Virus record (IMG/VR): IMGVR_UViG_3300026292_000003
Location: 124,001-188,000 of that record
Direction: 5' to 3' (one strand)
Length of the DNA: 64,000 nt
Part shown: positions 13,295 through 54,114 of the stretch, piece after piece
How positions within the stretch are numbered: the first letter of the stretch is position 1
Layout: every line of letters begins with the position of its first letter
Notes under the pieces: generated by a model
Seen by the model: the letters and a program-made list of their open reading frames with translations, nothing else
Databases searched by the model: none
Told to the model about the DNA's origin: nothing
Position numbers and translations under genes: made by a program

Positions 13295-13304
13295 TCAAGT
13301 ATTT

Positions 13305-13389: not shown

Positions 13390-13390
13390 A

Positions 13391-13530
13391 ATCGGGTTGT
13401 GCCGTAATACACACGTTTAACACTCACGGTTAAGTGTTAAGGACTATAACGAGACGGACGACTTACACTAGTAACAAAAAACATACACAAAGGATAAAAC
13501 AGGACCGGGCCCTTTTGAAATAAGCCCAAC
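13391..13530 (+). ncRNA. Candidate structured RNA downstream of the tRNA pair
   Basis: Non-coding; hairpins tgtg/caca, ttaacact/agtgttaa and gggc/gccc; complementary loops ccgt and acgg. Confidence 0.35.
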
Positions 13531-13647
13531 GTAGGACATACACAAAACTAAATATAATTATAAAAAGAATTTACAAGAAGTAAAGGAGACATTGAAGTAA
13601 GCACTCAAGTAGGTTTATAAACGGTGTGTAGCATAAGAAAGGAATTT

Positions 13648-13854
13648 ATGTTGAAAGAAGTAATGATAAATGCGGCGAAGAAACACGCCGAAGCAGAAAT
13701 TGACCTTCATAAAGCCAACATAGAAGTCTATATGCAACAAGTGGTTGGAATTGGTGAACATTCAGATATTATTGAAACGATCCAAAAAGAATTAGACAAA
13801 ATGGCTATGGCACATGATAGACTTGAGATGCTTAATAAGTATTTCAATGCATAA
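13648..13854 (+). CDS. Conserved marine-phage hypothetical protein
   Basis: AAAGGA RBS then ATG 13648; VGIGEHSDI motif. Confidence 0.75.
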   Translation: MLKEVMINAAKKHAEAEIDLHKANIEVYMQQVVGIGEHSDIIETIQKELDKMAMAHDRLEMLNKYFNA

Positions 13855-13860
13855 AAATTT

Positions 13861-13892
13861 AAGTTAACACATTTTTGTGTGTTAACTTTTCT
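13861..13892 (+). terminator. Putative intrinsic terminator or processing hairpin
   Basis: aagttaacac/gtgttaactt 10-bp stem followed by tttctt, just before tRNA-Ala. Confidence 0.5.
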
Positions 13893-13895
13893 TAT

Positions 13896-13971
13896 GGGGG
13901 ATTAGCTCAGTAGGGAGAGCGCCTGATTTGCATTCAGGAGGTCGCAGGTTCGATTCCTGTATCCTCCACCA
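13896..13971 (+). tRNA. tRNA-Ala(UGC)
   Basis: Cloverleaf with G3-U70, loop tttgcat and CCA. Confidence 0.97.
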
Positions 13972-13989
13972 ACTTTTAAGAGAACTATT

Positions 13990-14097
13990 TTGCCTTTTTA
14001 TACAGAACGTATTACAATTTATAAAGAACCTAAGCCAAAGTGGCCTTGGGTAGTAGTGGCAATTTTAATAATAATGGTAGTATTATGGATATTATAA
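13990..14097 (+). CDS. Small single-TM peptide (not in ORF track)
   Basis: TTG start; MPFYTERITIYKEPKPKWPWVVVAILIIMVVLWIL; overlaps the next start. Confidence 0.5.
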   Translation: MPFYTERITIYKEPKPKWPWVVVAILIIMVVLWIL

Positions 14098-15029
14098 TTT
14101 ATCAAAATAACACAGGATCAGCACCAGCAATTAATTGGTGGCTATCACAAGAACTAAACATAGGTCCAGAGTTTTATGCATTTAATGATGGATATTGTAG
14201 ACCTAGAGGACATCATGTAGGAGGAGTAGTAATTGAAGATAGTAACTCACCTTACCACGAAAAGCATAGAGAATCAATTAACTTATTAGAATCACAAAAT
14301 GAAGAATCAAATCACGAAACACAACACCTTGTAGTAAATGGTAAATTAACAAAACCAGAAATAAAACAACAAGGAACTATAGATGTAACAAAACCTTTTA
14401 TTAAAGATAAAAGTAAATTTGATTATTTTGTTTGGAGTAATTATGGTGGCAATTTAGTTAATCCTGAAACTATAATTAAAGCAGATAAAACTTTATTAGT
14501 TGATAATAGTGTAGCAGAACAATTATTTTTTTATATAAGTCAATATGCTTTCGCTTGGATTGAAACACCTGATGACATATCAGAACAAACAGAATCGTGG
14601 ATACAAGAACATCCTAGTATTAATAATTGGAAAGAAATATGGTATAAAAAACACCACAACAATGTTCTTGCAAAATGGAAAGATGGTGACTTAAAATATA
14701 TGTGGCAATTAAACTTTGCTCACAATGATTTAAGAACTGCTATAGAAAATGGTAAAGAAGATATTGAATTTATTAATGCAGATGATCATCAAAGATTATT
14801 TGAAGTAAAAAAACAAGAAGAAGATTTTTCAGAAACACTTTTCTCATATACAAATAAAGAAGTAGATCATATTGTTGTAGGAGATGATTGGTTTACTAAA
14901 ACAGAAGACATTATGGCATATTTGGGAATAGTTAATTCATTTAGATTAAAAAAGTTCTTAATTGATTACATCAAAGTGTATAAACAAAAGAAACAGTTAT
15001 ATACAGACACCTTCTCAAAATATCTATAA
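14085..15029 (+). CDS. Hypothetical protein
   Basis: ATG 14085 preferred over GTG 14040. Confidence 0.7.
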   Translation: MDIIIYQNNTGSAPAINWWLSQELNIGPEFYAFNDGYCRPRGHHVGGVVIEDSNSPYHEKHRESINLLESQNEESNHETQHLVVNGKLTKPEIKQQGTIDVTKPFIKDKSKFDYFVWSNYGGNLVNPETIIKADKTLLVDNSVAEQLFFYISQYAFAWIETPDDISEQTESWIQEHPSINNWKEIWYKKHHNNVLAKWKDGDLKYMWQLNFAHNDLRTAIENGKEDIEFINADDHQRLFEVKKQEEDFSETLFSYTNKEVDHIVVGDDWFTKTEDIMAYLGIVNSFRLKKFLIDYIKVYKQKKQLYTDTFSKYL

Positions 15030-15043
15030 ATAAACAAGATTAT

Positions 15044-15119
15044 TCCTCGATAGCTCAGTTGGTAGAGCAGTTGACTGTTAATCAATTGGTCGCAGGTTCG
15101 AGTCCTGCTCGAGGAGCCA
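15044..15119 (+). tRNA. tRNA-Asn(GUU)
   Basis: Cloverleaf, loop ctgttaa, CCA; TATAAATA at 15025. Confidence 0.97.
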
Positions 15120-15120
15120 G

Positions 15121-15195
15121 GCGGGCGTAGCTCAGTGGTAGAGCGATTCGTTGCCAACGAATAGGTCGTCGGTTCGACCCCGATCGCCCGCTCCA
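15121..15195 (+). tRNA. tRNA-Gly(GCC)
   Basis: Cloverleaf, loop ttgccaa, U73 discriminator, CCA. Confidence 0.96.
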
Positions 15196-15201
15196 AATTT
15201 T

Positions 15202-15278
15202 GGCTCTGTAGCTCAGTTGGTTAGAGCATCCGACTCATATTCGGAAGGTCAGAAGTTCGAATCTTCTCAGAGCTACCA
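15202..15278 (+). tRNA. tRNA(CAU): elongator Met or Ile2
   Basis: Cloverleaf, loop ctcatat; lacks initiator features (no C1-A72, no three G-C pairs in the anticodon stem). Confidence 0.93.
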
Positions 15279-15307
15279 AACCGATAAATACATTATAGGA
15301 AAAAATA

Positions 15308-15784
15308 ATGAGAAACATTTATATAATATTAATTTTATCAGCAGTACTTACAATACTTCATTTGTTATATGCTCCAGCAATAGCAAAAGAAATAGAAATG
15401 AAAGTATACAATTACGAAATCACAAGAGTAATTGATGGAGACACAGTAGCATTTGCGGCACCATTTCTTCCAGCACCACTTAAACAAGAATTAAGTATAA
15501 GAGTATATGGAGTTGATACTCCAGAAAAAGGTTGGAGAGCAGAATGTGAGTCAGAAGCAAAATGGGGTGAAAAAGCTTCGCAGTTTACTAAAGATCAATT
15601 AAACAATGCTAAAAAATTACAAGTAGCCATTGCTAAATGGGATAAATTTGGTGGTAGAGTTTTAGGTGATATTATCATTGATGGCAAAAGTCTTAGACGT
15701 ATGCTTATTGAAAATGGATTTGCCAGAGAATATTACGGTGACAAAAAAGAAACTTGGTGTAAGCCAAAAAGACAAAAATCTTAG
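15308..15784 (+). CDS. Staphylococcal nuclease (SNase)-like protein with N-terminal TM/signal
   Basis: VIDGDT, IRVYGVDTPE and DKFGGRVLG. Confidence 0.9.
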   Translation: MRNIYIILILSAVLTILHLLYAPAIAKEIEMKVYNYEITRVIDGDTVAFAAPFLPAPLKQELSIRVYGVDTPEKGWRAECESEAKWGEKASQFTKDQLNNAKKLQVAIAKWDKFGGRVLGDIIIDGKSLRRMLIENGFAREYYGDKKETWCKPKRQKS

Positions 15785-15786
15785 TA

Positions 15787-15815
15787 TTGACATCTAATCA
15801 AAACAATAGTATAAT
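15787..15815 (+). promoter_or_regulatory. Consensus sigma70 promoter for tRNA-Asp/Glu
   Basis: TTGACA-17 bp-TATAAT. Confidence 0.85.
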
Positions 15816-15829
15816 AATAACTTAATTTA

Positions 15830-15906
15830 GGGGGTGTAGCTCAGTTGGTTAGAGCGCCTGCCTGTCACGCAGGAGGTCGAGGGTTCGAGTCCCTTCACTC
15901 TCGCCA
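15830..15906 (+). tRNA. tRNA-Asp(GUC)
   Basis: Cloverleaf, loop ctgtcac, G73, CCA. Confidence 0.96.
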
Positions 15907-15911
15907 CAAAT

Positions 15912-15986
15912 GGTCCCTTCGTCTATCGGTTAGGACACATGGTTTTCATCCATGAAAGAGGAGTTCGATTCTCCTAGGGACTACCA
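15912..15986 (+). tRNA. tRNA-Glu(UUC)
   Basis: Cloverleaf, Glu-type D-arm gtcta..ggac, loop ttttcat, CCA. Confidence 0.95.
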
Positions 15987-26226: not shown

Positions 26227-26814
26227 ATGCTTATACCAACAGTAATAGAAACAACGGGTCGCGGTGAACGTGCATACGACATTTACAGTCGTTTGCTTAA
26301 AGACCGAATTGTAATGCTTAATGGCGAAGTTAACGACCATTCAGCTCAATTAATAGTAGCACAGATGCTATTTTGTGAGTCACAGAATAATGCAGAAGAT
26401 ATAAATTTTTATATCAATAGCCCAGGCGGTGCAGTAACCGCAGGTCTTGCAATTTACGATACAATGCAGTTTATTAAATCTCCAGTAAGCACAATCGTAT
26501 TAGGTCAGGCTTGTAGTATGGGTAGTTTTCTTGCAATGGCAGGAGAACCAGGTAAACGTAATATATTACCTAATGCTAGAACTATGATTCACCAACCAAG
26601 TGGCGGTGCAGGTGGACAAGCTACAGATATGGAAATACAAGTAAAAGAGATTATTAAAATAAAAGAGAAATTAACAAAAATTTATGAAAAGCATAACACC
26701 GCTAATAAGTCATATGATGAGTTAAGCCAAGCTATGGAGAGAGACAATTATCTAAGTGCAGACGAAGCAGTAGCCTTCGGTTTAGCTGATAAAGTAGTTT
26801 CTAGTAAAACATAG
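26227..26814 (+). CDS. clpP: ATP-dependent Clp protease proteolytic subunit
   Basis: [23 protein letters not shown] (Ser), MIHQP (His), ERDNY (Asp). Confidence 0.97.
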
Positions 26815-26891
26815 TACTTTTTAAATCTTAAATATTGAATAAATACATGGCATAGACTATATCTATGTTATTAAAAGAATTGTGAAATTAT

Positions 26892-27251
26892 ATGTATACT
26901 TACAATGCGAAACTAATCAGGGTCATTGATGGTGATACTGTAGATTTAGAAATCGATCTAGGGTTTGATCTATCTATTAGACAGCGACTTAAACTATATG
27001 GTGTAGGTACACCTGATAGTAGATCAGCTGATACTGATACAAAACAAAAAGGCTTAGAAGCTAAACAACGTCTTACTGAATTACTACCAAGACAGTTTAA
27101 GATTACCACTATCCTTAATAAAAGAGGAAAGTATGGTAGAGTGTTAGGTACTATATTCCTAACAGATAAAGATACAGGTAAAGAAGTAAACGTTAACGAA
27201 CTAATGGTCACAGAAGGCCATGCAGTTAAGTATACTATTCAAGGGAAATAA
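26892..27251 (+). CDS. SNase-like nuclease
   Basis: VIDGDTVD, KYGRVLG, VNELMVTEGHA. Confidence 0.85.
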   Translation: MYTYNAKLIRVIDGDTVDLEIDLGFDLSIRQRLKLYGVGTPDSRSADTDTKQKGLEAKQRLTELLPRQFKITTILNKRGKYGRVLGTIFLTDKDTGKEVNVNELMVTEGHAVKYTIQGK

Positions 27252-27254
27252 TAT

Positions 27255-29024
27255 ATGAGGTATTTTGGTTATTGGACAATATTAGTAGCATTGGCAATCA
27301 GTGCAGTAGCGGCCTACTACAGTATCGTTGGCCTAGTTGCTATATTTTCTGCGGCTATGATACCTATTATTATCATGGGTTCCGTATTAGAAATTGGTAA
27401 ACTAACGTCGGCAGTTTGGTTACACTTAAATTGGCGGCAGGCACCCATTCTTATTAAAACGTATCTATCCGTGGCAGTATTGTTGCTTATGTTTATCACA
27501 AGTATGGGTATATTTGGCTTTTTAAGTAAAGCACATATCCAGCAAACAAGTCTAGCCACGGAGAACGTAGCACAAATAGAAATTATTGAAGATAGTATTG
27601 TTAGAATCAAACAAGACGTAGTTAGATTTGAAAATAAAATTAAAGAATATGAGAACAAAGATGATAAAATTGATACTACAATACAAGATAAGATTGCACT
27701 AGAGCAAGAAAGAATTAATACCGCATATGACGGTGTTAATCCTTCTATTGAAGAGTTAAACAAACGTATTGAAAAGCAGTTAGCTGACAGAGAAAAGACT
27801 ATTGAACCATACACACGTGAATTAGATAAGATTCAAAGTGATTTAGCATTAATAGATCAATATGTAGCAGATGAAGAAATTAAAAAGCTACAAGGTATGA
27901 TTGGTGCTAGGCAAGATGGTAGATATGGTAGTAGAACTGCTAAAGCAGTTAAAGAGTATAGAGAAACTTTAAATACACGTAAAGACGAAATTTTAAAAAT
28001 TATAAACAACATAAAAACACAGGAAGATCCAGTAATTACTGATGCTAGAAATGAGATCAAGAGACTAAGAGCATTAGCAGAACAACAGATTGCTGATTCA
28101 AATGAATTGATTACTAGACTCAGATCACAGTTAGGCCAGGGGCAAGTAGAAGATAGTACAGAAGAGATAATACTATTAAGAGATAATATTAATGCATCTA
28201 ACACAGAACTCAGCGAATTATATACTAAAAAAATTGCGTTAGAGGGAGAGAGTAGACAATTAGAAGCAGAAGTAGGCCCGGTTAAATATATTGCAGAATT
28301 AATATATGGCGACGAAGCAACAAGAAATATGCTGGAAGACGCCGTTAGATTTGTTATGTTAATTCTTGTGTTTGTTTTTGACCCGTTGGCCATTGTACTT
28401 GTTATTTCAGGTATCATATTGGTAGAAAGGAATGCCAGGCCAGGCAAAAAGACAAAAATCTTAAATGAAAAAACAGTACAAGAAGAACAAGCTAAACCTA
28501 TCAAAGACAGCGACATCGGAGAAAATGATACAGATATTGAGAGCGGGCCAGAAGCTACCGAAGAGTCTGATGTACAAGATGAAATTCTGGAACAAGAAGA
28601 AGTAATTGAACGTGTTCCTATGACAGAGGAAGAAGAGTATGCCAATGCAGGTATCACTAAAGAAGAAGCAGAAAAAGATCCTGAAATCTACAAAGACGAA
28701 GAAGGCAAAGAATATACAGTTGATGCAAAAACTGGAGAACGTAAGTATGTAATCAACAAAGTACAATGGGAACTAAATAAAAAAGAGAGAGCGGCGGCAA
28801 GAAAAGAAAAGAAACAATTAGTAGATAAAATTGTTGCTGAAATGAGAAGTACAGGAAGTTGGCCAGGTACAAGCTATATGGAAGGCGAAGGTGTTGTTAA
28901 AAAGAAAATTGAACAAATATTTGCCGACGATGCATCTTTAGAGTTAAAAGAACTTATGTCAAGAGCAGATGATTCAGTACTACAAGAAGTATATAACGAA
29001 ATATTAAAAGATACTAAAAAATGA
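27255..29024 (+). CDS. Membrane protein with long coiled coil and acidic C-tail
   Basis: N-terminal TMs, coiled coil, EVGPVKYIAELIYG and FVFDPLAI second TM block. Confidence 0.8.
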   Translation: MRYFGYWTILVALAISAVAAYYSIVGLVAIFSAAMIPIIIMGSVLEIGKLTSAVWLHLNWRQAPILIKTYLSVAVLLLMFITSMGIFGFLSKAHIQQTSLATENVAQIEIIEDSIVRIKQDVVRFENKIKEYENKDDKIDTTIQDKIALEQERINTAYDGVNPSIEELNKRIEKQLADREKTIEPYTRELDKIQSDLALIDQYVADEEIKKLQGMIGARQDGRYGSRTAKAVKEYRETLNTRKDEILKIINNIKTQEDPVITDARNEIKRLRALAEQQIADSNELITRLRSQLGQGQVEDSTEEIILLRDNINASNTELSELYTKKIALEGESRQLEAEVGPVKYIAELIYGDEATRNMLEDAVRFVMLILVFVFDPLAIVLVISGIILVERNARPGKKTKILNEKTVQEEQAKPIKDSDIGENDTDIESGPEATEESDVQDEILEQEEVIERVPMTEEEEYANAGITKEEAEKDPEIYKDEEGKEYTVDAKTGERKYVINKVQWELNKKERAAARKEKKQLVDKIVAEMRSTGSWPGTSYMEGEGVVKKKIEQIFADDASLELKELMSRADDSVLQEVYNEILKDTKK

Positions 29025-29473
29025 AATTAGATAATAGTTCTTATACGGTTACTCCTCCAGATCTAATGTTAACAGAACACGGTGTAAGTATTCTAGTTTC
29101 TAGTACCGACGAAAAGTTAATAAAAAAAGTAAAAGATATATTTGAAAAATATATCGCAACAAGCATTGTATTCTATATACAACAAAAACCAACAAACTCA
29201 AATACCCTACCATGGCTATGGAATGTATCAAAAACTTGTGAATTTATGATCATTGATCTTGATACCTGTGCAGAACCAGATATAATTGCAGGATTAATGA
29301 AATCAAGAGACGGTGAGAATACTGTACTATTTTACAGTGATAAGTACACTAGAAGAGATACAATAAAACTAATAAACGCAACAGGCGAAAATTTAGTAGT
29401 CACTAGGATGGAAGATATACATAACTATATAAGGTTACAAATGAACCCAGAGTATTTTGATGAGACCAAATGA
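29021..29473 (+). CDS. Hypothetical protein
   Basis: 150 aa, coupled. Confidence 0.7.
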   Translation: MKLDNSSYTVTPPDLMLTEHGVSILVSSTDEKLIKKVKDIFEKYIATSIVFYIQQKPTNSNTLPWLWNVSKTCEFMIIDLDTCAEPDIIAGLMKSRDGENTVLFYSDKYTRRDTIKLINATGENLVVTRMEDIHNYIRLQMNPEYFDETK

Positions 29474-30671
29474 TATAATCTGCAATTTTTGCGGAAAAAG
29501 TAGAACCCAAGTAAAAAAATTATTAGCAGGTGAGAATTCTAATCACATCTGTTCAGATTGCGTTGAGCTATGTTATGGTATTCTACAAAACAATGAAGTT
29601 AAAATAGAAAACACAATTCAAAAGAAATTTGTTCTTCCTACACCTAGAGAAATACACAAACATTTAGATGATTATGTTATAAGTCAAGATAAAGCAAAAA
29701 AGACTTTAAGTGTAGCAGTATATAATCATTATAAGAGAATAACATCAAATACAAAAACAAAATTACAAAAAGGCAACGTGTTTATGGCAGGTCCTACAGG
29801 AACTGGTAAAACACTAATGGCACAAACACTAGCCAATCATTTAGATGTACCATTTGTAGTTACTGATGCTACAGTTATTACAGAAAGTGGATACGCAGGT
29901 GAAGATGCAGAAGTGTTAATACACAAATTGTTTCAAGCGGCAGATTATGATATAGAAAGAGCAGAACGTGGAATAATATATATTGACGAAATAGATAAAA
30001 AAGCAAAACGTAATGATTTTGTTAGTTTAAGCAGAGATGTAAGTGGAGAAGGAGTTCAACAAAGTTTATTAAAACTAATAGAAGGTTCTAAAGTAACAGT
30101 ACCTAACAAGCCTCAAAGTAACCCAGAAAAAGTAGTTGTTGATACAACAAATATATTGTTTATTGTTGGTGGTGCATTTGTTGGGTTAGATGAAGTAGTT
30201 GCTAATAGACTTGGTAAATCAAAAATTGGTTTTAATGGCGAAGAAGGACATAAGATAGAAAATTGGACAGATTACTTACAAACTAAAGACTTGGTAAAGT
30301 ATGGATTAATACCAGAGTTTATTGGTAGATTTGCAAGTACTAACGTGTTAAGTAATTTAACCAAGGAAGACCTGGTAAAGATATTAATAGAACCAAAAGA
30401 TGCTATAGTAGAGCAGATCAAAGAGTTATTTTTACTTGACAAAATACAAATAGAGTTTAAAATGGAAGCATTGGAAGAGGTAGCAGATATAGCAATAAAA
30501 GAAGAAATTGGAGCCAGAGGGTTACGTAAGATACTCGATGGTGCATTACTTGAATTGCAATATAGATTACCAGAATTATTTAACGAAGGTATAAGAAAAA
30601 TTATTATTACAAAGAATGTTATTTCTAAAAACGAAGAACCACACTATATCAAAGGCAAAAATGCAACATAA
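29457..30671 (+). CDS. clpX: ATP-dependent Clp protease ATP-binding subunit ClpX
   Basis: C4 zinc finger, GPTGTGKT, IDEIDK, RDVSGEGVQQ and IGF loop. Confidence 0.96.
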   Translation: MMRPNDIICNFCGKSRTQVKKLLAGENSNHICSDCVELCYGILQNNEVKIENTIQKKFVLPTPREIHKHLDDYVISQDKAKKTLSVAVYNHYKRITSNTKTKLQKGNVFMAGPTGTGKTLMAQTLANHLDVPFVVTDATVITESGYAGEDAEVLIHKLFQAADYDIERAERGIIYIDEIDKKAKRNDFVSLSRDVSGEGVQQSLLKLIEGSKVTVPNKPQSNPEKVVVDTTNILFIVGGAFVGLDEVVANRLGKSKIGFNGEEGHKIENWTDYLQTKDLVKYGLIPEFIGRFASTNVLSNLTKEDLVKILIEPKDAIVEQIKELFLLDKIQIEFKMEALEEVADIAIKEEIGARGLRKILDGALLELQYRLPELFNEGIRKIIITKNVISKNEEPHYIKGKNAT

Positions 30672-31182
30672 ACGTTTTAAGAGAAAAGATCTGAAGCCTT
30701 TATATACTGCTAACGAAAGAATTAGATTTCCAGAAATTAGAGTTTCCTTACCAGATGGCGATAGTCAGGTCATGTCTACAAAGGAAGCCTTAGCAAAAGC
30801 AAAAGAAATGCAGTTAGACTTAATACTAATAGCTGAAAAAGCACAGCCACCAGTATGTAGAATAGTCTCACTCAATAAACATTTGTATGAGCTAAAGCAA
30901 AAAGAAAAACTGGCTAAAAAGAAACAACGCGAAAGCATTGTAGAAGTCAAAGAAATACGTATGGGTGTTAATATTGATACTCATGATTTGGAAACAAAAG
31001 CTAATATGGCTCGTAAGTTCTTAGACAAAAATAATAAACTAACAGTTATAGTGACAATGAAAGGCAGAGAACGTAGTAGGCCGGAGTCTGCTAAAGAAGT
31101 ACTAAATACATTTGCTGATAAACTTGGAATTAAATACGAGCAAGTCAGTATTCAGAGTCACAGAATAACTGGAAAAACATAG
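30661..31182 (+). CDS. infC: Translation initiation factor IF-3
   Basis: NERIR..IRV, LDLILIAEKAQPPVCRI, KEIRMGVNIDTHD, KGRE; ATG 30661 preferred. Confidence 0.92.
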   Translation: MQHKRFKRKDLKPLYTANERIRFPEIRVSLPDGDSQVMSTKEALAKAKEMQLDLILIAEKAQPPVCRIVSLNKHLYELKQKEKLAKKKQRESIVEVKEIRMGVNIDTHDLETKANMARKFLDKNNKLTVIVTMKGRERSRPESAKEVLNTFADKLGIKYEQVSIQSHRITGKT

Positions 31183-31188
31183 AAAAAT

Positions 31189-31476
31189 ATGGCATATAAT
31201 AGAAATAATAAAAATTACACCAGTAGTTGGCAGTCAAACGATAGACGCCCTAGACGTGAAGATAAACCTAAAGTTGGAGGTCTAACCGTTGAAGTAAGAA
31301 ACGGAAATCTTGAACAGGCTTTAAGAAGACTGAAAAAGATGATAGCCAAAGAAGGTTTAATGCAAGAAGTTCGTGACCGTAGATACTTTATAAGTAATAC
31401 GGAAAAAAGACTGAAAGCAGAAGCGGCTGGAAAAGCTAGACATCGTAGACGTATCGCTAAAGATAATCCAAAGTAA
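31189..31476 (+). CDS. rpsU: Ribosomal protein bS21 with N-terminal extension
   Basis: VEVRNGNLEQALRRLKK..KEGL..E.R.R.YF..EKR. Confidence 0.88.
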   Translation: MAYNRNNKNYTSSWQSNDRRPRREDKPKVGGLTVEVRNGNLEQALRRLKKMIAKEGLMQEVRDRRYFISNTEKRLKAEAAGKARHRRRIAKDNPK

Positions 31477-31523
31477 ATCTTATACTTTTATAGTATAAAT
31501 ATAGTGTAGTAGGAGGTATAGTT

Positions 31524-31826
31524 ATGACAAGAACTCAAGAGACGGGTGTTGCAGAGATTACCAAGTTAAAATCTCCACCTAAGTATTGTGTAATATTACT
31601 CAATGACGATTCTACTCCTATGGAGTTTGTTATTAATATATGTCAAACTATATTCAACAAGACTAAAGCAAAAGCAGAAGCTATTACATTAGAAGTACAT
31701 AAAAAAGGTAAAGGCGTAGCAGGAGTTTATAGTTACGAAGTAGCAGAACAGAAATGTGTAGAAACTGTAACCGAAGCAAGAAGAAACGGCTTTCCTTTAG
31801 ATGTTACATTAGAAAAAACAGAGTAA
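31524..31826 (+). CDS. clpS: ClpS adaptor
   Basis: PPKY.VILLNDDSTPMEFV, VHKKGKG and FPL; AGGAGG RBS. Confidence 0.93.
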   Translation: MTRTQETGVAEITKLKSPPKYCVILLNDDSTPMEFVINICQTIFNKTKAKAEAITLEVHKKGKGVAGVYSYEVAEQKCVETVTEARRNGFPLDVTLEKTE

Positions 31827-32695: not shown

Positions 32696-33124
32696 ATGAA
32701 AATAGGATTTACTTGTTCAACATTTGATTTACTACACGCCGGGCATATTGCTATGTTGCGAGAAGCTAAAGCACAATGTGATTATTTAATAATAGGATTG
32801 CAAACAGATCCTACAATAAGCAGACCAACAAAGAATTCACCTATACAAACAGTTGTAGAAAGATATACACAATTAAAAGCAGTAGGGTATGTAGATGAAA
32901 TAATTCCATATACTACTGAACAAGATTTAGAAGATATACTTTCTATGTATAATATTGATGTAAGGGTATTAGGAGAAGAATATAGAGAAAAAGATTTTAC
33001 AGGAAAAGATATCTGTAAGCAGAGAGATATTGCTCTATACTTTAATAAGCGAGATCACAGGTTCAGTTCAACAGAATTGAGGCAACGTGTTAACACAAAG
33101 GAAATGAAAAATGAGAGTGCGTGA
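32696..33124 (+). CDS. Cytidylyltransferase (TagD-like)
   Basis: TFDLLHAGH (HIGH-like), GLQTDP and RFSST. Confidence 0.88.
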   Translation: MKIGFTCSTFDLLHAGHIAMLREAKAQCDYLIIGLQTDPTISRPTKNSPIQTVVERYTQLKAVGYVDEIIPYTTEQDLEDILSMYNIDVRVLGEEYREKDFTGKDICKQRDIALYFNKRDHRFSSTELRQRVNTKEMKNESA

Positions 33125-34232
33125 AGAAGTTAAACTAAATTTTGAAGATGTATTAATGGAACCAAAACGTTCTACATTAGGTAGTAGACGTGACGTACAA
33201 ATGACTAGAAAGTTTACATTTAGAAACTCTGGTAAAGTGATTGACTTCTGTCCTATATTTGCTAGTAATATGGATGGTGTAGGTACATTTGAAGTAGCTA
33301 AAGTATTACAAGAACATAAAATGATGACTGTAATTACAAAAAGTACACCACTAGAAGAATGGAAAGCGGCCGCTGGTACAGGTTTAAGAATGCAAAGTAT
33401 AAGTGTATGTACAGGTACAAATAAAATGTGGGACCCAGATGCACCAGACTATGCTAATATGAAAGCAGTACTAGAAGCATTTCCTGATGTAAAAATGATT
33501 ACTGTAGATGTTGCTAATGCTTATCACGAGAATTTTGTAGACTTTATTAAGATGATTAGAGATGAATATCCTGATAAAGTTATTGTAGCAGGTAACGTAG
33601 TTACACCAGAGATGGTAGAAGAATTAATTATAAACGGTGCTGACGTAGTTAAAATTGGTATTGGACCAGGCTCAGTATGTACAACAAGAACAATGACAGG
33701 TATTGGAGTACCACAGTTTTCAGCTATATTAGAATGTGCAGATGCGGCAAATGGCGTTGATGGACATATTATGGCAGATGGTGGTTGTGTACACCCAGGA
33801 GATATTGCAAAAGCACTTGGTGGTGGAGCTCATATGGTTATGATAGGTGGTATGTTAGCAGGACACAAAGAAGGTGGTGGTAAACTTATCACTAAACATA
33901 CAGCCACAGGTGGTGCGTATAAAACACCTGAGGGAACATATGTTCCTTATTATGAAGAACAACAGTTTGTTGAGTTCTACGGAATGAGTTCAGATCGTGC
34001 TAGAGAGAAGCATGGCAAACGAAAAGATGGATATAGAGGTAACGAAGGTAGACATATTGTTATGCCTTACAGAGGACCTATTAATGACACAGTTGAGAAT
34101 ATACTAGGTGGTGTTAGATCAGCGGCCACTTATATTGGAGCAAGACGTTTAAAGGATATGCCAAAGTGTGCAACATTCGTAAGAACAAATAATGTTATCA
34201 ATAGAACTTACGAGCAATTCACAGTAAAATAA
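33111..34232 (+). CDS. guaC: GMP reductase
   Basis: VDVANAY, KIGIGPGSVCTTR, ADGG, FYGMSS, ILGGVRSA. Confidence 0.92.
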   Translation: MRVREEVKLNFEDVLMEPKRSTLGSRRDVQMTRKFTFRNSGKVIDFCPIFASNMDGVGTFEVAKVLQEHKMMTVITKSTPLEEWKAAAGTGLRMQSISVCTGTNKMWDPDAPDYANMKAVLEAFPDVKMITVDVANAYHENFVDFIKMIRDEYPDKVIVAGNVVTPEMVEELIINGADVVKIGIGPGSVCTTRTMTGIGVPQFSAILECADAANGVDGHIMADGGCVHPGDIAKALGGGAHMVMIGGMLAGHKEGGGKLITKHTATGGAYKTPEGTYVPYYEEQQFVEFYGMSSDRAREKHGKRKDGYRGNEGRHIVMPYRGPINDTVENILGGVRSAATYIGARRLKDMPKCATFVRTNNVINRTYEQFTVK

Positions 34233-34310
34233 GTATTGCTCAAAATGCATAACAGCCTTTACTAATTAAAACATCAGTTTTTTTCACTTCCGTGATAAAT
34301 AGAAGTGAAG

Positions 34311-34436
34311 ACAAAAAAGCGACCTCAGCTTATAAAAAATGAGTGGCACTAGGGAAAGACCAGGGCGTGCCGACGCCTCAAAACCGACTGACACCGGAAA
34401 AGACTGGAATTGGATTCTTTCCCGAGAATGAATCCC
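34311..34436 (+). ncRNA. GC-rich structured RNA leader (manA-like?)
   Basis: Several stems (ctca/tgag, ggcac/gtgcc, ccgg/ctgg, ggattc/gaatcc) and two RAAAGA loops after a late promoter. Confidence 0.55.
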
Positions 34437-34457
34437 AAAAAATTAATGGAGAAGAAG

Positions 34458-34685
34458 ATGACTCGAACTTTGAGTGCTCTTGTAACGGCGATTTCTGATG
34501 CGTTAACCCCAAAAGGATCAACAGACTCGCAATTACTACTTTGGGCTAAAACAGAATATGGTAATGACTGGCAGTATGCATACAGATGGATGAAAGAGAA
34601 TCCTGGTACTGTACCTTTTAATAAACCAGTTGTAAAAATAGAAGTACAGAAGGATAAAGAACATGATGAATACTTTGGTGTCTAA
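34458..34685 (+). CDS. Small hypothetical protein
   Basis: GGAG RBS then ATG 34458; WAKTEYGNDWQYAY. Confidence 0.7.
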   Translation: MTRTLSALVTAISDALTPKGSTDSQLLLWAKTEYGNDWQYAYRWMKENPGTVPFNKPVVKIEVQKDKEHDEYFGV

Positions 34686-34851
34686 TTATTGTGCTATATG
34701 TGAAGCAGTATCACATTGGACAAGAAGATTTTTCGCAAGATTACTAGAAACTTTTGAAACAGTAGGGAAAGCAAGAGCTTCCGCAGAACTAACCCGACAA
34801 GGGTATCATAAAGAAGCAAAGGCGTTGATGTGCGATGTTAAAAGCGATTAA
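34663..34851 (+). CDS. Small hypothetical protein
   Basis: 62 aa; ARASAELTRQGY motif. Confidence 0.65.
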   Translation: MMNTLVSNYCAICEAVSHWTRRFFARLLETFETVGKARASAELTRQGYHKEAKALMCDVKSD

Positions 34852-34969
34852 GAAATTTTTTAAAAATATAACTATGTCAGAAAGCGAACGTTATCTAGCA
34901 AATTCAGTAGATTTAGTTGACCTTGAAAGAAGACAACGAGAATTAAGAACTAAAGGATTTAGAGTATAA
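34835..34969 (+). CDS. Small protein, DUF3563-like (not in ORF track)
   Basis: MLKAIKKFLKNITMSESERYLANSVDLVDLERRQRELRTKGFRV. Confidence 0.6.
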   Translation: MLKAIKKFFKNITMSESERYLANSVDLVDLERRQRELRTKGFRV

Positions 34970-38259: not shown

Positions 38260-38279
38260 AAAATTAATCCACAATTCGG

Positions 38280-38309
38280 TTGACAATTAAACTTTTACGT
38301 GTATAAATA
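38280..38309 (+). promoter_or_regulatory. Overlapping sigma70-like and late promoters for tmRNA
   Basis: TTGACA-16-TATAAA with TATAAATA at 38302-38309. Confidence 0.65.
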
Positions 38310-38314
38310 TACAA

Positions 38315-38600
38315 GTAAGCGATGAAGCGACTTAACGGTAGACTGGACCTCGGGGCAGTACCGAGCAGGTCCACCATAAACACTTTGTAGTTACCAGAAC
38401 TAGATGGTACCCTAAAGTAAGGACAGACGCAGAGTGTTTATGATGGGCCTGAATTAGGATCGACAGATATTATAGGGAAGTGGAGTTTACCGGGTGATTG
38501 CGTAATTGATCAAATTTTATAAACGCAGAAGATAATTTTGCAATAGCGGCCTAATTTAGGCACGTAGGGGTGGGAACTACCTGGCAACAGAAGTGCCACT
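38315..38600 (+). ncRNA. ssrA: Circularly permuted two-piece tmRNA (alphaproteobacterial type)
   Basis: Acceptor piece ends caggtcc-a-cca (38366-38376) with T-arm ctcgg/ggcagta/ccgag; 68-nt intervening segment; coding piece starts gggcctg (38445) with G3-U70; tag AEDNFAIAA* at 38525-38554. Confidence 0.9.
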
Positions 38601-38665
38601 GTATTCTTTAGAATTCAGTTACTACAAAAAGATAAACTTCTTATCTTTATATCAAGGAAATATAT

Positions 38666-40450: not shown

Positions 40451-40527
40451 GGACCATTAGCTCAGCTGGATAGAGCGCCTGTCTACGGAACAGGAGGCCA
40501 GGAGTTCGAATCTCTTATGGTCCGCCA
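40451..40527 (+). tRNA. tRNA-Arg(ACG)
   Basis: Cloverleaf, A20, loop ctacgga, CCA. Confidence 0.96.
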
Positions 40528-43843: not shown

Positions 43844-43920
<77 letters not shown>

Positions 43921-43926
43921 ATTTAT

Positions 43927-44012
43927 GCGAGTGTGGCGGAATAGGTAGACGCAACGGACTTAAAATCCGTTATCTTTATGGTGTGTGGGTTCGAGTCCCT
44001 CCACTCGCACCA
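43927..44012 (+). tRNA. tRNA-Leu(UAA)
   Basis: Cloverleaf with long variable arm, loop cttaaaa, CCA. Confidence 0.96.
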
Positions 44013-45937: not shown

Positions 45938-47125
45938 TTGACTCAGAATAATCACAGCACTAGTTGGTGTCCTATACCGTTTAATGCTATTTCGTTTCAC
46001 CCAACCGGCAATTTAACTCGTTGTATGATGAGCAATACGCCGATGGGTGAAACCTTTGACAGCCCTCAGATGCAAAAACTGCGTCATGATATGTTGGCTG
46101 GCACCTGGGATAAAGAAGGGTGTATGACTTGTTGGAAAAAAGAACAACAAGGTAATATAAGTCAAAGACAAAAGTGGTTACAACGTAGTCCCTCAGATTT
46201 CAAAAATACAGATGGATTTATAAAACCAAAAATAACAGGAAACCCTGTTAATCACCTTTTTATTAACTATAGCAATATATGTAATTTTAAGTGTAGAATG
46301 TGTGGACCAGATTATAGTACTAGTCTAATACCAGAGCATAAACATTTACATACAATAGGATTACGTAAAGAAGTAAAAATAGAAAATATTAAAAATAGAA
46401 ATTTTATTAATACATATCTAAAAGAAAATCCAGAAAGTTTAAAAGATGTAACTAGTATATGGATAACAGGTGGCGAACCCTTTATGGACGATAACTGTTA
46501 TGATTTAATTGACATACTAGCTGAAAATGGAAATGAATTTGAAACAGATATGGTTATTACTACAAATGGCTCTAAAGTAGATTTAGATAAGTTACAAAAA
46601 TTTGAGAATTTAAAATTCTTTGAATTAGATTTAAGTATTGATGCACCTAATACTATGTTTGAGTATATGCGTAGTGCAGGCGTATTTACTTGGGATCAAA
46701 TGAGTAAGTTAATTGATGATTTAACTTATTTTAAAAAACAGAATAGTAGTTGGTTTCATATGTGTTTTAATGCTAGTATACAAGCATATAATTACGATAC
46801 AATACTTGAATTTGATTCAGTATGTAGGAAAGCAGGAGCATTGAACAATACTAGAATGTTAATATTTCCAGAACATTTTAGACTCAACGTACTACCTTAT
46901 AAATATAGAAAAGAACAATTTGATAAAATCTATGATTATAAAGTAGTAAATGATCCAAGGTTTAAAAGAACTCATATGGATATATGCAAAAATCTTTTAC
47001 AAGAACAAGCAAATGAAACTGTAATCAGTAGATTTAAAGAACTTACGATAGCACAAGACAAGTATAGAAAAATGTCTATAAAAGACTTCCATCCACGGTT
47101 AGCGGAGTTTATATATGAAAAATAA
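45938..47125 (+). CDS. Radical SAM protein with N-terminal twitch/SPASM-like domain
   Basis: CNFKCRMC, GGEPF, TTNG; N-terminal WCPIPF..RC..C..C. Confidence 0.88.
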   Translation: MTQNNHSTSWCPIPFNAISFHPTGNLTRCMMSNTPMGETFDSPQMQKLRHDMLAGTWDKEGCMTCWKKEQQGNISQRQKWLQRSPSDFKNTDGFIKPKITGNPVNHLFINYSNICNFKCRMCGPDYSTSLIPEHKHLHTIGLRKEVKIENIKNRNFINTYLKENPESLKDVTSIWITGGEPFMDDNCYDLIDILAENGNEFETDMVITTNGSKVDLDKLQKFENLKFFELDLSIDAPNTMFEYMRSAGVFTWDQMSKLIDDLTYFKKQNSSWFHMCFNASIQAYNYDTILEFDSVCRKAGALNNTRMLIFPEHFRLNVLPYKYRKEQFDKIYDYKVVNDPRFKRTHMDICKNLLQEQANETVISRFKELTIAQDKYRKMSIKDFHPRLAEFIYEK

Positions 47126-48428
47126 TCAAAATGAAAACGGCTTATGGAGATTTGATCCAAAAAAGCACGTAGTTCCTGCTGACCAAATAGAAACAAAAGT
47201 AGTTGAAAACGATCAATGGAAAAATATACACAGTAACAGTTGGTGTCCAATTCCGTTTAATACAATAAGCTGGCATCCTAGTGGGCATATATCAAGATGT
47301 ATGATGAGTGACGACAATATGGGAACTCATTATGACAGTGAACATATGCAAAGGTTAAGAAGAGATATGTTAGCTGGTAAGTGGGATACTTATGGATGTA
47401 CTAGCTGTCTTAACAAAGAAAAGAAAGGTTATCGTAGTCAACGTATGAGTTGGCTAAGACATGATAAGATTAAGCATCTAGGAAATCCAGAACCTTATCG
47501 TAATCCAAAATTAACCGGTAATCAGATAAGTCATTTGTTTATTAATTTTTCAAATGTATGTAATTTTAAATGTAGAATGTGTAGTGCAAACTTTAGTAAT
47601 AGTTTGATACCTGAAAACAAGCATATGTTAGAAAAATTTCCACTTGAATATAAAAAGGTTCCACTTCAGAATCAAAAAAACTTTAATGATATTATTGGAT
47701 ATTTAGAAAAGAACTTAGACATACTACCTGGTATAAAAAGTATTTGGATGACAGGAGGAGAGCCCTTCATGACTGATGATCCATACAAACTGATTGACTT
47801 AATTGTAGAACACGGCAAGCCAGAAGAACTTGATATAGTTATTACTACAAATGGATCAAAATTAGATTTTGAAAAGTTAGAAAAGTTTAACAAAGTTAAA
47901 AAATTAACATTAGATTTAAGTATTGATGCAGTAGGACCTTTGTTTGAATATATGAGAAGTAATAAGGTTTATACTTGGAGTCAAATGGAAAATACTTGTG
48001 GTAAATTATATGAATATAAAAAAGTAAATAAGAAATGGTTTGATTTTTTTATTAATAGCAGTTACCAAATATTTAATTATGATAACTTATTAGAATTTTA
48101 CGATTTTATATATGATCATAAATGTGAAAGTAATATAAGAATGTTAATGTTTCCTGAACATTTTAGAGTGGGTAACTTGCCAAAAGTATTTAAAGATGAA
48201 GCTAGAGCAATGTGTGATAAGATAGAATTAAGGTATGGAAATAGAAATGTACATAAGATTAAAATTCTAGATGATATTAGAACTGCATTAGATATTGAAG
48301 AACCTTACTTACATAGAACTTTAAGAGTAGTACCAGAACAAGATAAATTTAGAGGAGTATACTTAACTGACTATCACGATAAACTAGCTGACTTAATATA
48401 TGGACCAAAACAATTATGCCTGTTTTAA
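47115..48428 (+). CDS. Radical SAM protein with N-terminal twitch domain (tandem paralogue)
   Basis: CNFKCRMC, GGEPF; closely similar to the upstream gene. Confidence 0.88.
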   Translation: MKNNQNENGLWRFDPKKHVVPADQIETKVVENDQWKNIHSNSWCPIPFNTISWHPSGHISRCMMSDDNMGTHYDSEHMQRLRRDMLAGKWDTYGCTSCLNKEKKGYRSQRMSWLRHDKIKHLGNPEPYRNPKLTGNQISHLFINFSNVCNFKCRMCSANFSNSLIPENKHMLEKFPLEYKKVPLQNQKNFNDIIGYLEKNLDILPGIKSIWMTGGEPFMTDDPYKLIDLIVEHGKPEELDIVITTNGSKLDFEKLEKFNKVKKLTLDLSIDAVGPLFEYMRSNKVYTWSQMENTCGKLYEYKKVNKKWFDFFINSSYQIFNYDNLLEFYDFIYDHKCESNIRMLMFPEHFRVGNLPKVFKDEARAMCDKIELRYGNRNVHKIKILDDIRTALDIEEPYLHRTLRVVPEQDKFRGVYLTDYHDKLADLIYGPKQLCLF

Positions 48429-53453: not shown

Positions 53454-54114
53454 TCCTTGGTATATTCTTGGCGTTGAACCTAACGCATCGCTTACCGCGA
53501 TAAAAAAAGCATATAAAAGATTAGCAATTAGAATGCACCCAGACAAAGGTGGCTCTGTAGCTGATTGGTTAAATGTAAGTCAAGCATATGAAAAGATTTT
53601 AAAGAAAGAACACGTACCTGTAAAGAAAGGTAAAGATGTTAAATATGTTGATATATACTTAACTATACAACAACAAATAAATGGTTTTGAAGGCTTTGTA
53701 GTAATAGATGAAGAAAAAGAATTATATTTAAAAGTAAAAATACCAGCAGGTGCATTAAGAAATGATAAGTTTAGAGTAATACACAATGCTAAAAAGTACA
53801 TTATAAATATTAAAGAAAAAGCAGATAAAGTCTTTACAAGACAAGGAAATAATGTTATAGTATATAAAAAGTTAGATATAATAGACATAATGAAACAAAA
53901 ACCGTTTGTTGTTATATCTCCTTTAGGTGAATATCTCGAAGTACAAATTCCACCAAATACAGATTCTGGAAGTATAATTGTCGTAAAAGGACAAGGCTTA
54001 TACAACAGAAGAACAAAGAAAAGAGGAAACTTAAGAATTAACGTGAAAGTAAATATACCCACAGTGAACAAAGATAATGTTCAACAAATTATAAAAAGAT
54101 TAAAAGATGACTGA
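53437..54114 (+). CDS. DnaJ/CbpA-like co-chaperone
   Basis: J-domain with HPD and DnaJ C-terminal domain (GQGL..RGNL); no zinc finger. Confidence 0.88.

What the first reader, a model, noticed from the sequence alone, without database searches (positions are those of the whole stretch)
34283..34461. GC-rich multi-stem RNA leader with repeated RAAAGA loops and alternative pairings
Seen: after a late promoter, about 125 nt fold into ctca/tgag, ggcac/gtgcc enclosing gg-GAAAGA-cc, ccgg-AAAAGA-ctgg and ggattc/gaatcc. ggcgt/acgcc is mutually exclusive with ggcac/gtgcc, giving switch-like alternatives. It lies between guaC and a small-protein operon. From memory it resembles the marine-phage manA RNA motif, but this is unverified. 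Inference: a riboswitch-like or protein-binding leader with unknown ligand, possibly nucleotide-related.
Basis: partly seen in the sequence, partly recalled or inferred. Interest (0 to 1): 0.65.

Follow-up and report, generated by a model that had tools for sequence, protein, structure and literature searches.

The report
Structured leader RNA of marine phages
The flagged stretch is a real, strongly conserved folded RNA (a pseudoknot plus a row of look-alike hairpins) at the start of a phage messenger RNA for several tiny proteins; it belongs to a large family found so far only in uncultured marine phages, matches no catalogued RNA family, and its way of working is still unknown.

Summary
Window 34293-34460 (+) carries a T4-late-promoter-like box and a ~150-nt 5' leader. 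The leader has an H-type pseudoknot (34317-34343), hairpins H1, H2, H4 and H5, and a strong SD 12 nt after H5. It precedes three small genes: A, C and a DUF3563 protein.

Related leaders occur in well over 100 IMG/VR contigs. They always sit on the same strand, upstream of the same small-protein operon. That operon carries either DUF3563 or DUF1127, never both.

Covariation supports the pseudoknot, H1, H2 and H4 (94-96% of cells paired; 0 of 500 shuffles reach the covariation score). Compensatory variants support H5.

Rfam 15 gives no match, so this is not manA, preQ1 or cuckoo/ar14. No cultured phage and no bona fide bacterial genome carries it. The guaC neighbour is incidental.

The number of G-[NANAGA]-C hairpins varies from 1 to 5 per leader. 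H5 keeps a fixed distance to the SD. I therefore favour a multivalent protein-binding translational operator over a metabolite riboswitch. The mechanism is inferred, not shown.

The parts
34293..34301 (+). T4-late-promoter-like box TGATAAATA, followed by a conserved GTG (34305-07). The inferred transcription start is near 34307.
   Evidence: Kept at the same place in relatives, often as TATAAATA-N3-GTG. TATAAATA is depleted in the window, 7 copies against 16 expected. Promoter function is inferred.
34317..34343 (+). H-type pseudoknot. S1 is AAGC 34317-20 with GCUU 34328-31. L1 is GAC 34321-23. S2 is CUCA 34324-27 with UGAG 34340-43. L3 is the A-rich AUAAAAAA 34332-39.
   Evidence: S1 pair 1 is GC:29 and AU:13. 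S2 pair 1 is CG:36, UA:4 and AU:2. S2 pair 2 is UA:40 and CG:2. Variant list.
34344..34348 (+). Conserved linker UGGCA, which with C34349 reads UGGCAC (UGRCAC across the family).
   Evidence: Nearly invariant in A6. The same GAC-type flank precedes H4.
34349..34363 (+). Hairpin H1, with loop GAAAGA at 34354-59 and A34351 bulged.
   Evidence: Covariation: the third pair is AU, UA, GC or GU.
34364..34377 (+). Hairpin H2, GGCGU with ACGCC, loop GCCG.
   Evidence: all four counted pairs change on both sides. For example, pair 58-66 is AU:13, GC:7 and UA:3.
34378..34393 (+). Linker UCAAAACCGACUGACA.
   Evidence: GACUGACAC plus H4 is a repeat of the UGGCAC plus H1 unit. Model R1 hits 34380-34407 at E=0.009.
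34394..34407 (+). Hairpin H4, CCGG with CUGG, loop AAAAGA at 34398-403. It contains a G-U pair, so it pairs only on the + strand.
   Evidence: CG/GC, CG/UA and GC/GU pair types.
34412..34435 (+). Hairpin H5. The lower stem is GGAUUC with GAAUCC, there is a U-U mismatch, the upper stem is UUC with GAA, and the loop is CCGA.
   Evidence: Seven sequence variants of this type all give the same two-tier fold, with U-A, G-U, A-U and C-G exchanges. Other H5 types are listed.
34448..34460 (+). SD GGAG (34448-51) and the start codon of gene A (34458-60).
   Evidence: The distance from H5 to the SD is 12 nt here. Across the family the median is 12 and the interquartile range 9-14.
34458..34685 (+). Gene A, 75 aa, with the motif WAKTEYGNDWxYAY.
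   Evidence: No Pfam, PHROG or NCBIfam family.
34663..34851 (+). Gene C, 62 aa, with the motif ARAxxxLxxxGxHxxAKxLM.
34835..34969 (+). Gene B, 44 aa, basic, DUF3563.
   Evidence: Pfam PF12086, E=1.2e-7, above its cut-off.

Best explanation
The region is the structured 5' untranslated leader of an mRNA. Transcription probably starts from a T4-type late promoter. The mRNA encodes an operon of small proteins.

Shown: the RNA, read on the + strand, folds into these parts:
- a 5' H-type pseudoknot with an A-rich third loop;
- two copies of a hairpin unit, 'GAC-flank / short stem / G-[NANAGA]-C loop' (H1 and H4);
- a variable hairpin (H2);
- a terminal two-tier hairpin (H5), 12 nt upstream of a strong SD.

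Inferred: the repeated, sequence-conserved loops form a multivalent binding platform for an RNA-binding protein. With H5 at the 5' edge of the ribosome-binding region, occupancy of the platform would set how well 30S subunits load on gene A, and possibly how long the mRNA lives.

The most economical candidate ligand is one of the operon's own small basic proteins, which would give feedback control. In the window that is the DUF3563 protein. In about half of the related operons it is a DUF1127 protein, a domain whose Rhodobacter member CcaF1 binds RNA.
For: Conservation and structure:
- The leader core is 90-97% identical in relatives whose gene A is 81-86% identical at the nucleotide level.
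- On A6, 94% of cells pair and 0 of 500 shuffles reach the covariation score. On A5, 96% pair and again 0 of 500.
- Pseudoknot S2 has three Watson-Crick pair types.
- G-U pairs fix the strand.
- There is no + strand terminator between the RNA and gene A.

Link to the operon:
- The leader always lies upstream of, and in the same orientation as, the small-protein operon. Among 93 distinct contexts, A is present in 70, C in 53, DUF3563 in 40 and DUF1127 in 39. DUF3563 and DUF1127 never occur together. Pfam confirms both domains.

Modular build:
- There are 1-5 ANAGAC loops per leader.
- Minimal members consist of pseudoknot + H1 + H5 only.
- H4 matches the H1 model.

Coupling to translation:
- The distance from H5 to the SD is tightly kept, median 12 nt and interquartile range 9-14, in 118 contexts. 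The SDs are strong, AAGGAG or AGGAGA.

Candidate partner:
- The DUF1127 protein CcaF1 binds RNA and is co-transcribed with tandem-hairpin RNAs (PMC8034643; PMC11707872).
Against: - No binding partner is shown.
- DUF3563 has no known function, and hhalign sees no homology to DUF1127 (probability 0.8%).
- 14 of 93 operons have neither domain by my motif test.
- Salmonella YjiS (DUF1127) showed no RNA association (PMC11707872).
- Leader features do not sort cleanly with DUF3563 versus DUF1127.
- The extreme conservation of single-stranded linkers would also fit a ligand-binding RNA.
- Covariation counts are inflated by relatedness of the sequences.
- There is no expression data. The promoter and the transcript ends are inferred.
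Confidence: 0.45

Rival explanations
1. A source of trans-acting RNA, like the cuckoo/CcsR RNAs. The leader would be cut off the mRNA, for example in the A/C-rich stretch between H5 and the SD. The released multi-hairpin RNA, perhaps helped by the co-encoded DUF1127 or DUF3563 protein, would then act on host or phage mRNAs. It would do so through its CCUC-containing loops (pseudoknot loop, H5) or its purine-rich NANAGA loops.
For: - Bacterial DUF1127 genes are co-transcribed with tandem-hairpin sRNAs that lie in the 5' or 3' UTR, and CcaF1 affects their maturation (PMC8034643).
- 39 of 93 phage operons carry DUF1127.
- The loops are sequence-conserved.
- The core is more conserved than the coding sequence.
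Against: - There is no terminator or known processing site.
- The loops lack the defining CCUCCUCCC motif, and no Rfam ar14/cuckoo hit appears.
- The tight H5-SD spacing argues for a role in cis.
- No targets were sought.
Confidence: 0.2
2. A riboswitch for a small molecule or ion. The pseudoknot with its A-rich loop (an architecture like preQ1-I or SAM-II), or the H1/H4-H5 ensemble, would bind a ligand and change access to the SD.
For: - The junction and linker nucleotides are highly conserved.
- The pseudoknot is supported by covariation and has an 8-nt A-rich L3.
- H1 'GGGAAAGA' is perfectly complementary to H5 'UCUUUCCC' in the window, which gives an alternative long-range helix in the MFE fold.
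Against: - The architecture is not fixed. The pseudoknot is replaced by a plain hairpin in most members, and the number of hairpins varies from 1 to 5.
- No Rfam riboswitch hit appears.
- The downstream genes are small proteins of unknown function, not transporters or enzymes.
- Loop-H5 complementarity shows no co-evolution: -6.39 kcal/mol observed against -6.49 for permuted partners.
Confidence: 0.12
3. A constitutive structural element with no ligand. It would be a 5' stabiliser against 5'-end-dependent decay, and/or a translational enhancer or standby site for 30S subunits.
For: - Most members begin with a stable hairpin right at the inferred 5' end.
- The loops are purine-rich and SD-like.
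- H5 sits at the edge of the ribosome-binding region.
Against: A stabiliser needs only a stem. It does not explain invariant loop and linker sequences, the pseudoknot, or a core more conserved than the adjacent coding sequence.
Confidence: 0.15
4. Not an RNA element at all. The alternatives are chance stems, a DNA-level site with repeated protein-binding boxes spaced GAC-N9-GAC, or a translated N-terminal extension or upstream ORF.
For: - The MFE z-score is only -1.6.
- ORFs overlap the region: a TTG start at 34410 in frame with gene A, and 34339-34431.
- Some gene callers used the longer start (P0008 and P0016).
Against: - Compensatory changes occur in six helices, and G-U pairs are strand-specific.
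- Length differences between close relatives in the H5-SD part are not multiples of three: 49 nt against 51, 53, 54, 57 and 58 nt.
- The ATG of the 34339 ORF is absent where the family has AAAGAG at that place.
Confidence: 0.03

Closest known systems
Cuckoo / CcsR (Rfam ar14) RNAs with the DUF1127 protein CcaF1 in Alphaproteobacteria
   Same: Both are tandem hairpins with sequence-conserved loops, co-transcribed with a gene for a tiny arginine-rich protein. In the bacterial systems the RNAs lie in the 5' or 3' UTR. DUF1127 genes sit in 39 of 93 related phage operons. The pseudoknot loop and the H5 loop contain CCUC.
   Different: The defining CCUCCUCCC loops are absent and there is no Rfam match. 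The window's own operon has DUF3563, not DUF1127. The dominant conserved loop here is purine-rich (NANAGA). The element also has a pseudoknot and lies at a fixed distance from an SD.
Phage T4/T2 gene 32 mRNA leader pseudoknot (translational operator)
   Same: Both have a 5'-proximal H-type pseudoknot in a leader of a T4-like phage message. In gene 32 the pseudoknot nucleates binding of the encoded protein for feedback control of translation (from established knowledge; mentioned in PMC10690425).
   Different: The downstream genes are unrelated. Here the space between the pseudoknot and the RBS is filled with hairpins, not unstructured A/U-rich RNA. The pseudoknot is dispensable in most family members.
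preQ1-I riboswitch (also SAM-II/SAM-V)
   Same: All are very small H-type pseudoknots whose third loop is an A-rich tract. Here L3 is AUAAAAAA, which could lie in the minor groove of stem 1.
   Different: No Rfam hit appears at E<=10. There is no loop 2. Stem 2 does not include the SD, which lies more than 100 nt away. There is no queuosine or SAM gene context.
Lambda nut boxB hairpins, and Csr/Rsm-type multi-hairpin RNAs
   Same: All are short stems capped by purine-rich loops that proteins read, and the loops are repeated along one RNA. Many loops here begin with GGA.
   Different: The loops here are hexaloops whose invariant part is AGA followed by C, not GAAGA/GAAAA pentaloops or ANGGA. 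No N-like or CsrA-like partner was identified.
manA RNA motif
   Same: Both are structured RNAs seen in marine phage sequence.
   Different: There is no match to the Rfam model, and the architecture and gene context differ.

Membership tests
manA RNA motif (Rfam) | A match to the family covariance model | tested here: not met
   cmscan of all 4227 Rfam 15 families gave nothing at the gathering threshold on the window. It gave nothing on the + strand of 34300-34460 at E<=10, and nothing on the leaders of 10 related loci at E<=1.
manA RNA motif (Rfam) | The gene context reported for manA RNAs (recalled from memory: mannose/fructose-metabolism or photosystem genes, cyanophage or cyanobacterial setting) | tested here: not met
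   The downstream genes are small proteins A, C and DUF3563. The phage carries an alphaproteobacterial-type tmRNA.
preQ1-I riboswitch | A match to the covariance model | tested here: not met
   No hit at E<=10.
preQ1-I riboswitch | An H-type pseudoknot with an A-rich 3' tail | tested here: met
   S1, S2 and an 8-nt A-rich L3, supported by covariation.
preQ1-I riboswitch | An expression platform in which P2 or the tail overlaps the SD or a terminator | tested here: not met
   The SD lies at 34448, about 105 nt after S2. There is no terminator.
Cuckoo/CcsR (ar14) RNAs | Hairpin loops carrying CCUCCUCCC | tested here: not met
   Only CCUC occurs, in the pseudoknot loop, and UUUCCC or UCCUC in H5. 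No Rfam hit.
Cuckoo/CcsR (ar14) RNAs | Adjacency to a DUF1127 ORF (CIN1 locus) | tested here: inconclusive
   Met in 39 of 93 related loci (Pfam E=2e-11 in L264). Not met in the window, where the operon has DUF3563.
T4 gene 32 operator | A leader pseudoknot upstream of a gp32 (ssDNA-binding protein) gene, followed by unstructured RNA | tested here: not met
   The downstream gene A is a 75-aa protein with two predicted helices. The leader is filled with hairpins.
Metabolite riboswitch (generic) | One fixed aptamer architecture shared by all members | tested here: not met
   The pseudoknot is present in only part of the family. There are 1-5 hairpin modules, and minimal members are about 96 nt long.
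Metabolite riboswitch (generic) | Ligand-dependent structure change | not testable with these tools
   This needs in-line probing or SHAPE.
Csr/Rsm-type protein sponge or operator | Multiple ANGGA motifs in hairpin loops, one of them at the SD | tested here: inconclusive
   Many loops read G-GA... (GGAAAGA, GGAUAGA, GGAGAGA). However, the first G is the closing pair. H3-type loops (GCAAAGA) lack GGA, and the invariant part is AGAC.

The most novel reading that the evidence does not exclude
Marine jumbo and T4-like phages carry their own RNA-plus-microprotein regulatory module. A late-expressed multi-hairpin RNA with a pseudoknot would work together with co-encoded DUF1127 or DUF3563 microproteins. 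This would be a viral counterpart of the bacterial cuckoo/CcaF1 pair, used to reprogramme translation or RNA decay in the infected cell rather than only to control its own operon.
Probability: 0.15. Interest if true: 0.8.

Novelty: new variant of a known kind. Interest (0 to 1): 0.6.

Why it matters
If the reading is right, this is an undescribed, abundant cis-regulatory RNA family of uncultured marine phages. It has a clear, testable architecture: a pseudoknot, repeated NANAGA hairpins, and a terminal hairpin at a fixed distance from the SD.

It is tied to an equally uncharacterised operon of microproteins. That operon links DUF3563 and DUF1127, which appear to be interchangeable in it.

The family offers a compact model for how phages control microprotein expression late in infection. 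It also gives a handle on the function of DUF1127 and DUF3563 proteins, which are widespread in bacteria and poorly understood.

It further shows that the guaC neighbourhood and the 'manA-like' label would have been misleading annotations.

Tried and rejected
- **Rfam.** Searches at the gathering threshold and at permissive E-values, on the window and on 10 related loci, gave only chance hits.
- **Cultured phages.** blastn of the leaders and tblastn of protein A against 50,697 cultured-phage records found nothing relevant.
- **Bacterial and archaeal genomes.** Protein A in 185,579 species genomes gave only 3 MAG contigs. One is a 335-kb contig that looks like a binned phage.
It is not conserved.
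- **Kissing or switching between NANAGA loops and the H5 pyrimidine tract.** There is general complementarity, -6.4 kcal/mol against -4.9 for shuffled H5. There is no partner-specific co-evolution, -6.39 against -6.49 for permuted partners. In the window the 8-nt match GGGAAAGA/UCUUUCCC stays unexplained.
- **H5 loop pairing with the SD.** It appears in some MFE folds, but I saw no consistent register or covariation by eye, and it was not tested formally.
- **A second copy in the window.** Model R1 finds only 34315-34366, plus the internal repeat at 34380-34407. A GAUAGA hairpin at 56723-42 lies inside an ORF and is taken as chance.
- **Homology between DUF3563 and DUF1127.** hhalign probability 0.8%.
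- **Function of protein A.** No Pfam, PHROG or NCBIfam family. AlphaFold gives two helices at pLDDT 68, and I did not run a fold search on so weak a model. A profile search found 192 cluster representatives, all small and stand-alone.
- **Sigma-54 reading of the upstream GGCAC-N4-TTGCA element.** The spacing is one base short of the consensus, judged by eye. It was not pursued.
- **Published catalogue.** I could not check whether the motif is among the 8,495 unnamed IMG/VR candidates of PMC10690425, because no supplement is held.
- **Not used.** The single metagenome-contig scan was not run.

Full report
**Where the window comes from**

The window is part of IMG/VR contig 3300026292_000003 (221,643 bp). 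A protein identical to gene A is also on record on a 329,779-bp contig.

It is the auxiliary-gene region of a large uncultured marine phage. Pfam or Rfam support these genes:
- ribonucleotide reductase;
- ClpP, ClpX, ClpS and a ClpA/B-like ATPase;
- IF3 and ribosomal protein S21;
- a two-piece alphaproteobacterial-type tmRNA and 11 tRNAs.

The finding lies between a GMP-reductase/IMPDH-family gene (33111-34232) and three overlapping small ORFs:
- A, 34458-34685;
- C, 34663-34851;
- B, 34835-34969.

B matches Pfam DUF3563 above its cut-off. A and C match nothing in Pfam, PHROGs or NCBIfam.

**The observation**

The stretch is GC-rich for this genome, 0.48-0.49 against about 0.33.

Folding energy alone is not convincing: z = -1.6 on the + strand and -0.8 on the - strand. 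The case therefore rests on comparison with relatives.

**Relatives**

*Close relatives.* Loci L002-L005 have guaC 91-94% identical to the window's. Loci L386-L402 were fetched through protein-A homologues that are 68-77% identical to the window's protein A. In both sets the 92-nt core, from the pseudoknot to H4, is 90-97% identical. Gene A is only 81-86% identical at the nucleotide level, and the H5-SD part 75-85%.

*More distant relatives.* These were found in several ways:
- a DNA pattern search;
- a search for protein A in IMG/VR, which gave 150 relatives, 80 of them kept;
- a pattern for the 5' domain, which gave 89 loci;
- a 5'-domain pattern with the pseudoknot positions left free, which gave 86 loci.

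In these loci the upstream gene differs. guaC is adjacent only in the window's near kin. The RNA always precedes the same kind of small-protein operon, on the same strand.

**Anatomy in the window**

- Promoter-like box TGATAAATA at 34293-301, then GTG. Relatives often have TATAAATA-N3-GTG at the same place.
- Pseudoknot:
  - S1 is AAGC 34317-20 with GCUU 34328-31.
  - L1 is GAC.
  - S2 is CUCA 34324-27 with UGAG 34340-43.
  - L3 is AUAAAAAA.
- H1 at 34349-63, loop GAAAGA.
- H2 at 34364-77.
- Linker containing GACUGACAC.
- H4 at 34394-407, loop AAAAGA.
- H5 at 34412-35.
- SD at 34448-51 and AUG at 34458.

H1 and H4 are copies of one unit. A covariance model built on the pseudoknot plus H1 finds 34315-34366 at 74 bits. 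Its only other hit in the window below E=0.01 is 34380-34407.

**Covariation**

*On 44 sequences of pseudoknot plus H1 (A6).* 94% of cells pair, and 0 of 500 shuffles reach the covariation score.
- S1 pair 1 is G-C in 29 sequences and A-U in 13.
- S2 pair 1 is C-G in 36, U-A in 4 and A-U in 2.
- S2 pair 2 is U-A in 40 and C-G in 2.

The S2 variants are CUCA/UGAG, UUCA/UGAA, AUCA/UGAU and UCCA/UGGA.

*On 25 full leaders of the window's type (A5).* 96% of cells pair and again 0 of 500 shuffles reach the score. H1, H2 and H4 all show changes on both sides.

G-U pairs (GU:6 in H1, GU:5 in H4) would be A-C on the other strand. This fixes the + strand.

*H5.* The window's type has seven sequence variants, and all give the same two-tier fold. 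Their lower stem exchanges U-A, G-U, A-U and C-G, and their upper stem exchanges C-G and U-A. Other H5 types keep a GGAU...AUCC base and an apical loop containing CC.

The proposed switch is therefore not supported.

**It is not translated**

- The ATG of the 34339 ORF is missing in members that read AAAGAG there.
- Close relatives differ in the length of the H5-SD part by 2, 4, 5, 8 and 9 nt. The in-frame TTG extension of gene A is therefore not kept.
- No + strand terminator lies between the RNA and gene A.

**Variation across the family**

- Only part of the family has the pseudoknot. Most members start with a plain hairpin followed by a CA-rich linker.
- The number of G-[NANAGA]-C hairpins runs from 1 to 5.
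- Most of these hairpins are preceded by GAC, which gives a GAC-N9-GAC spacing.
- The loops seen are AAAAGA, GAAAGA, CAAAGA, GAUAGA, AAGAGA, GAGAGA and GACAGA.
- Minimal members consist of pseudoknot, H1 and H5 only, about 96 nt.
- The distance from H5 to the SD is tightly kept, with median 12 nt and interquartile range 9-14 in 118 contexts. The SDs are strong.

**The operon**

In 93 distinct contexts, A is present in 70, C in 53, a DUF3563-type gene in 40 and a DUF1127-type gene in 39. DUF3563 and DUF1127 never occur together.

Pfam confirms DUF1127 (E=2e-11) in L264, together with an ATP-synthase-c-like microprotein.

hhalign sees no homology between the two DUF families.

Protein A is a small, stand-alone, two-helix family. 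It has 192 cluster representatives among 1.84 billion.

**What it is not**

- Rfam 15 has no match for the window or for ten related leaders. This excludes manA, preQ1, ar14/cuckoo and the other curated families as members.
- No cultured phage has the leader or protein A.
- Species-level bacterial and archaeal genomes give only three MAG contigs that look like binned phage.

**Mechanism**

Shown: a conserved, structured, non-coding 5' leader on the + strand.

Inferred: the modular repetition of a hairpin with an invariant loop, together with a terminal hairpin at a fixed short distance from the SD, fits a multivalent protein-binding translational operator. It fits this better than a single-pocket riboswitch.

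The closest functional precedent is the bacterial cuckoo/CcsR-CcaF1 arrangement. There, tandem-hairpin RNAs lie in the UTR of a DUF1127 gene, and the DUF1127 protein binds RNA (PMC8034643; PMC11707872). The T4 gene 32 leader pseudoknot is a precedent for a 5' pseudoknot that nucleates feedback control of translation in T4-like phages.

Tests for a loop-H5 kissing switch gave only compositional complementarity, with no co-evolution.

I give 0.45 to the operator model. The rivals get 0.2 for a UTR-derived trans-acting RNA, 0.15 for a passive stabiliser or enhancer, 0.12 for a riboswitch, and 0.03 for no RNA function.

**Novelty**

The family is not in Rfam. As far as I could search, it is not described in the literature. 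It may sit unnamed among the 8,495 IMG/VR candidates of PMC10690425, which I could not check.

It is a new variant of a known kind, a structured phage mRNA leader, with an unusual modular build and an unexplored microprotein operon.

Noticed in passing
window 38260-38602 (+); tRNAs at 13219-15983, 40451-40524 and 43844-44009: The phage encodes a two-piece (permuted) alphaproteobacterial-type tmRNA (Rfam, 97-98 bits) and 11 tRNAs. This hints at an alphaproteobacterial host.
   Followed up: no
window 26227-31826 and 54107-56368: A block of proteostasis and translation genes sits in the phage: ClpP, ClpX, IF3, ribosomal protein S21, ClpS, and further on a ClpA/B-like ATPase. All are confirmed by Pfam.
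   Followed up: partly
window 34236-34262; the same place in L100-L174: A second conserved element lies 40-100 nt upstream of the late-promoter box. It reads TTGC-N6-GCATAACAGCC in the window. In relatives it reads TTGACA/GGCACA-cacTG-TTGCAAAAATAGCATAACAGCCTTGC, often after a covarying inverted repeat. It may be an earlier promoter or an operator for the same operon.
   Followed up: no
related loci, for example L302 6352-6570, L288 12322-12522, L207 3179-3349, L336 2463-2732: Unrelated small proteins of these operons (A, DUF3563, DUF1127) often end with the same C-terminal tail, N-x-N-L-[KR]-G-W-[VI]. The window's copies end in YFGV and GFRV. A shared docking or degradation signal is possible, but this is unexplained.
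   Followed up: no
93 leader contexts across L096-L382: DUF3563 and DUF1127 genes are mutually exclusive in the operon (40 against 39, never both). Even so, they show no detectable homology (hhalign probability 0.8%).
   Followed up: partly
L264 6414-6635 and 7029-8528 (-): One related operon also encodes an ATP-synthase-subunit-c-like 74-aa membrane protein (Pfam E=1e-10). By eye, a SpoVR/YcgB-like gene lies next to it on the opposite strand.
   Followed up: no
window, whole: TATAAATA is depleted: 7 copies against 16 +/- 4 expected. Copies on the + strand lie just before the tRNA cluster (15025), ClpS (31494) and the tmRNA (38302). This fits a promoter signal that is avoided elsewhere.
   Followed up: partly
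L384 (GTDB MAG PBPT01000016.1, 335,231 bp): A contig binned into a 'Candidatus Neomarinimicrobiota' MAG carries the phage leader and protein A. It is probably a mis-binned jumbo phage genome.
   Followed up: partly
window 34352-34359 and 34416-34423: GGGAAAGA (the 3' end of the H1 stem plus its loop) is perfectly complementary to UCUUUCCC (the 5' side of H5). This gives the long-range helix seen in the MFE fold. GGAAAG/CUUUCC is kept in most members, but both sides are invariant, so covariation cannot test it.
   Followed up: partly
window 45938-48428: Two adjacent radical-SAM genes sit in the phage. Their function was not examined.
   Followed up: no
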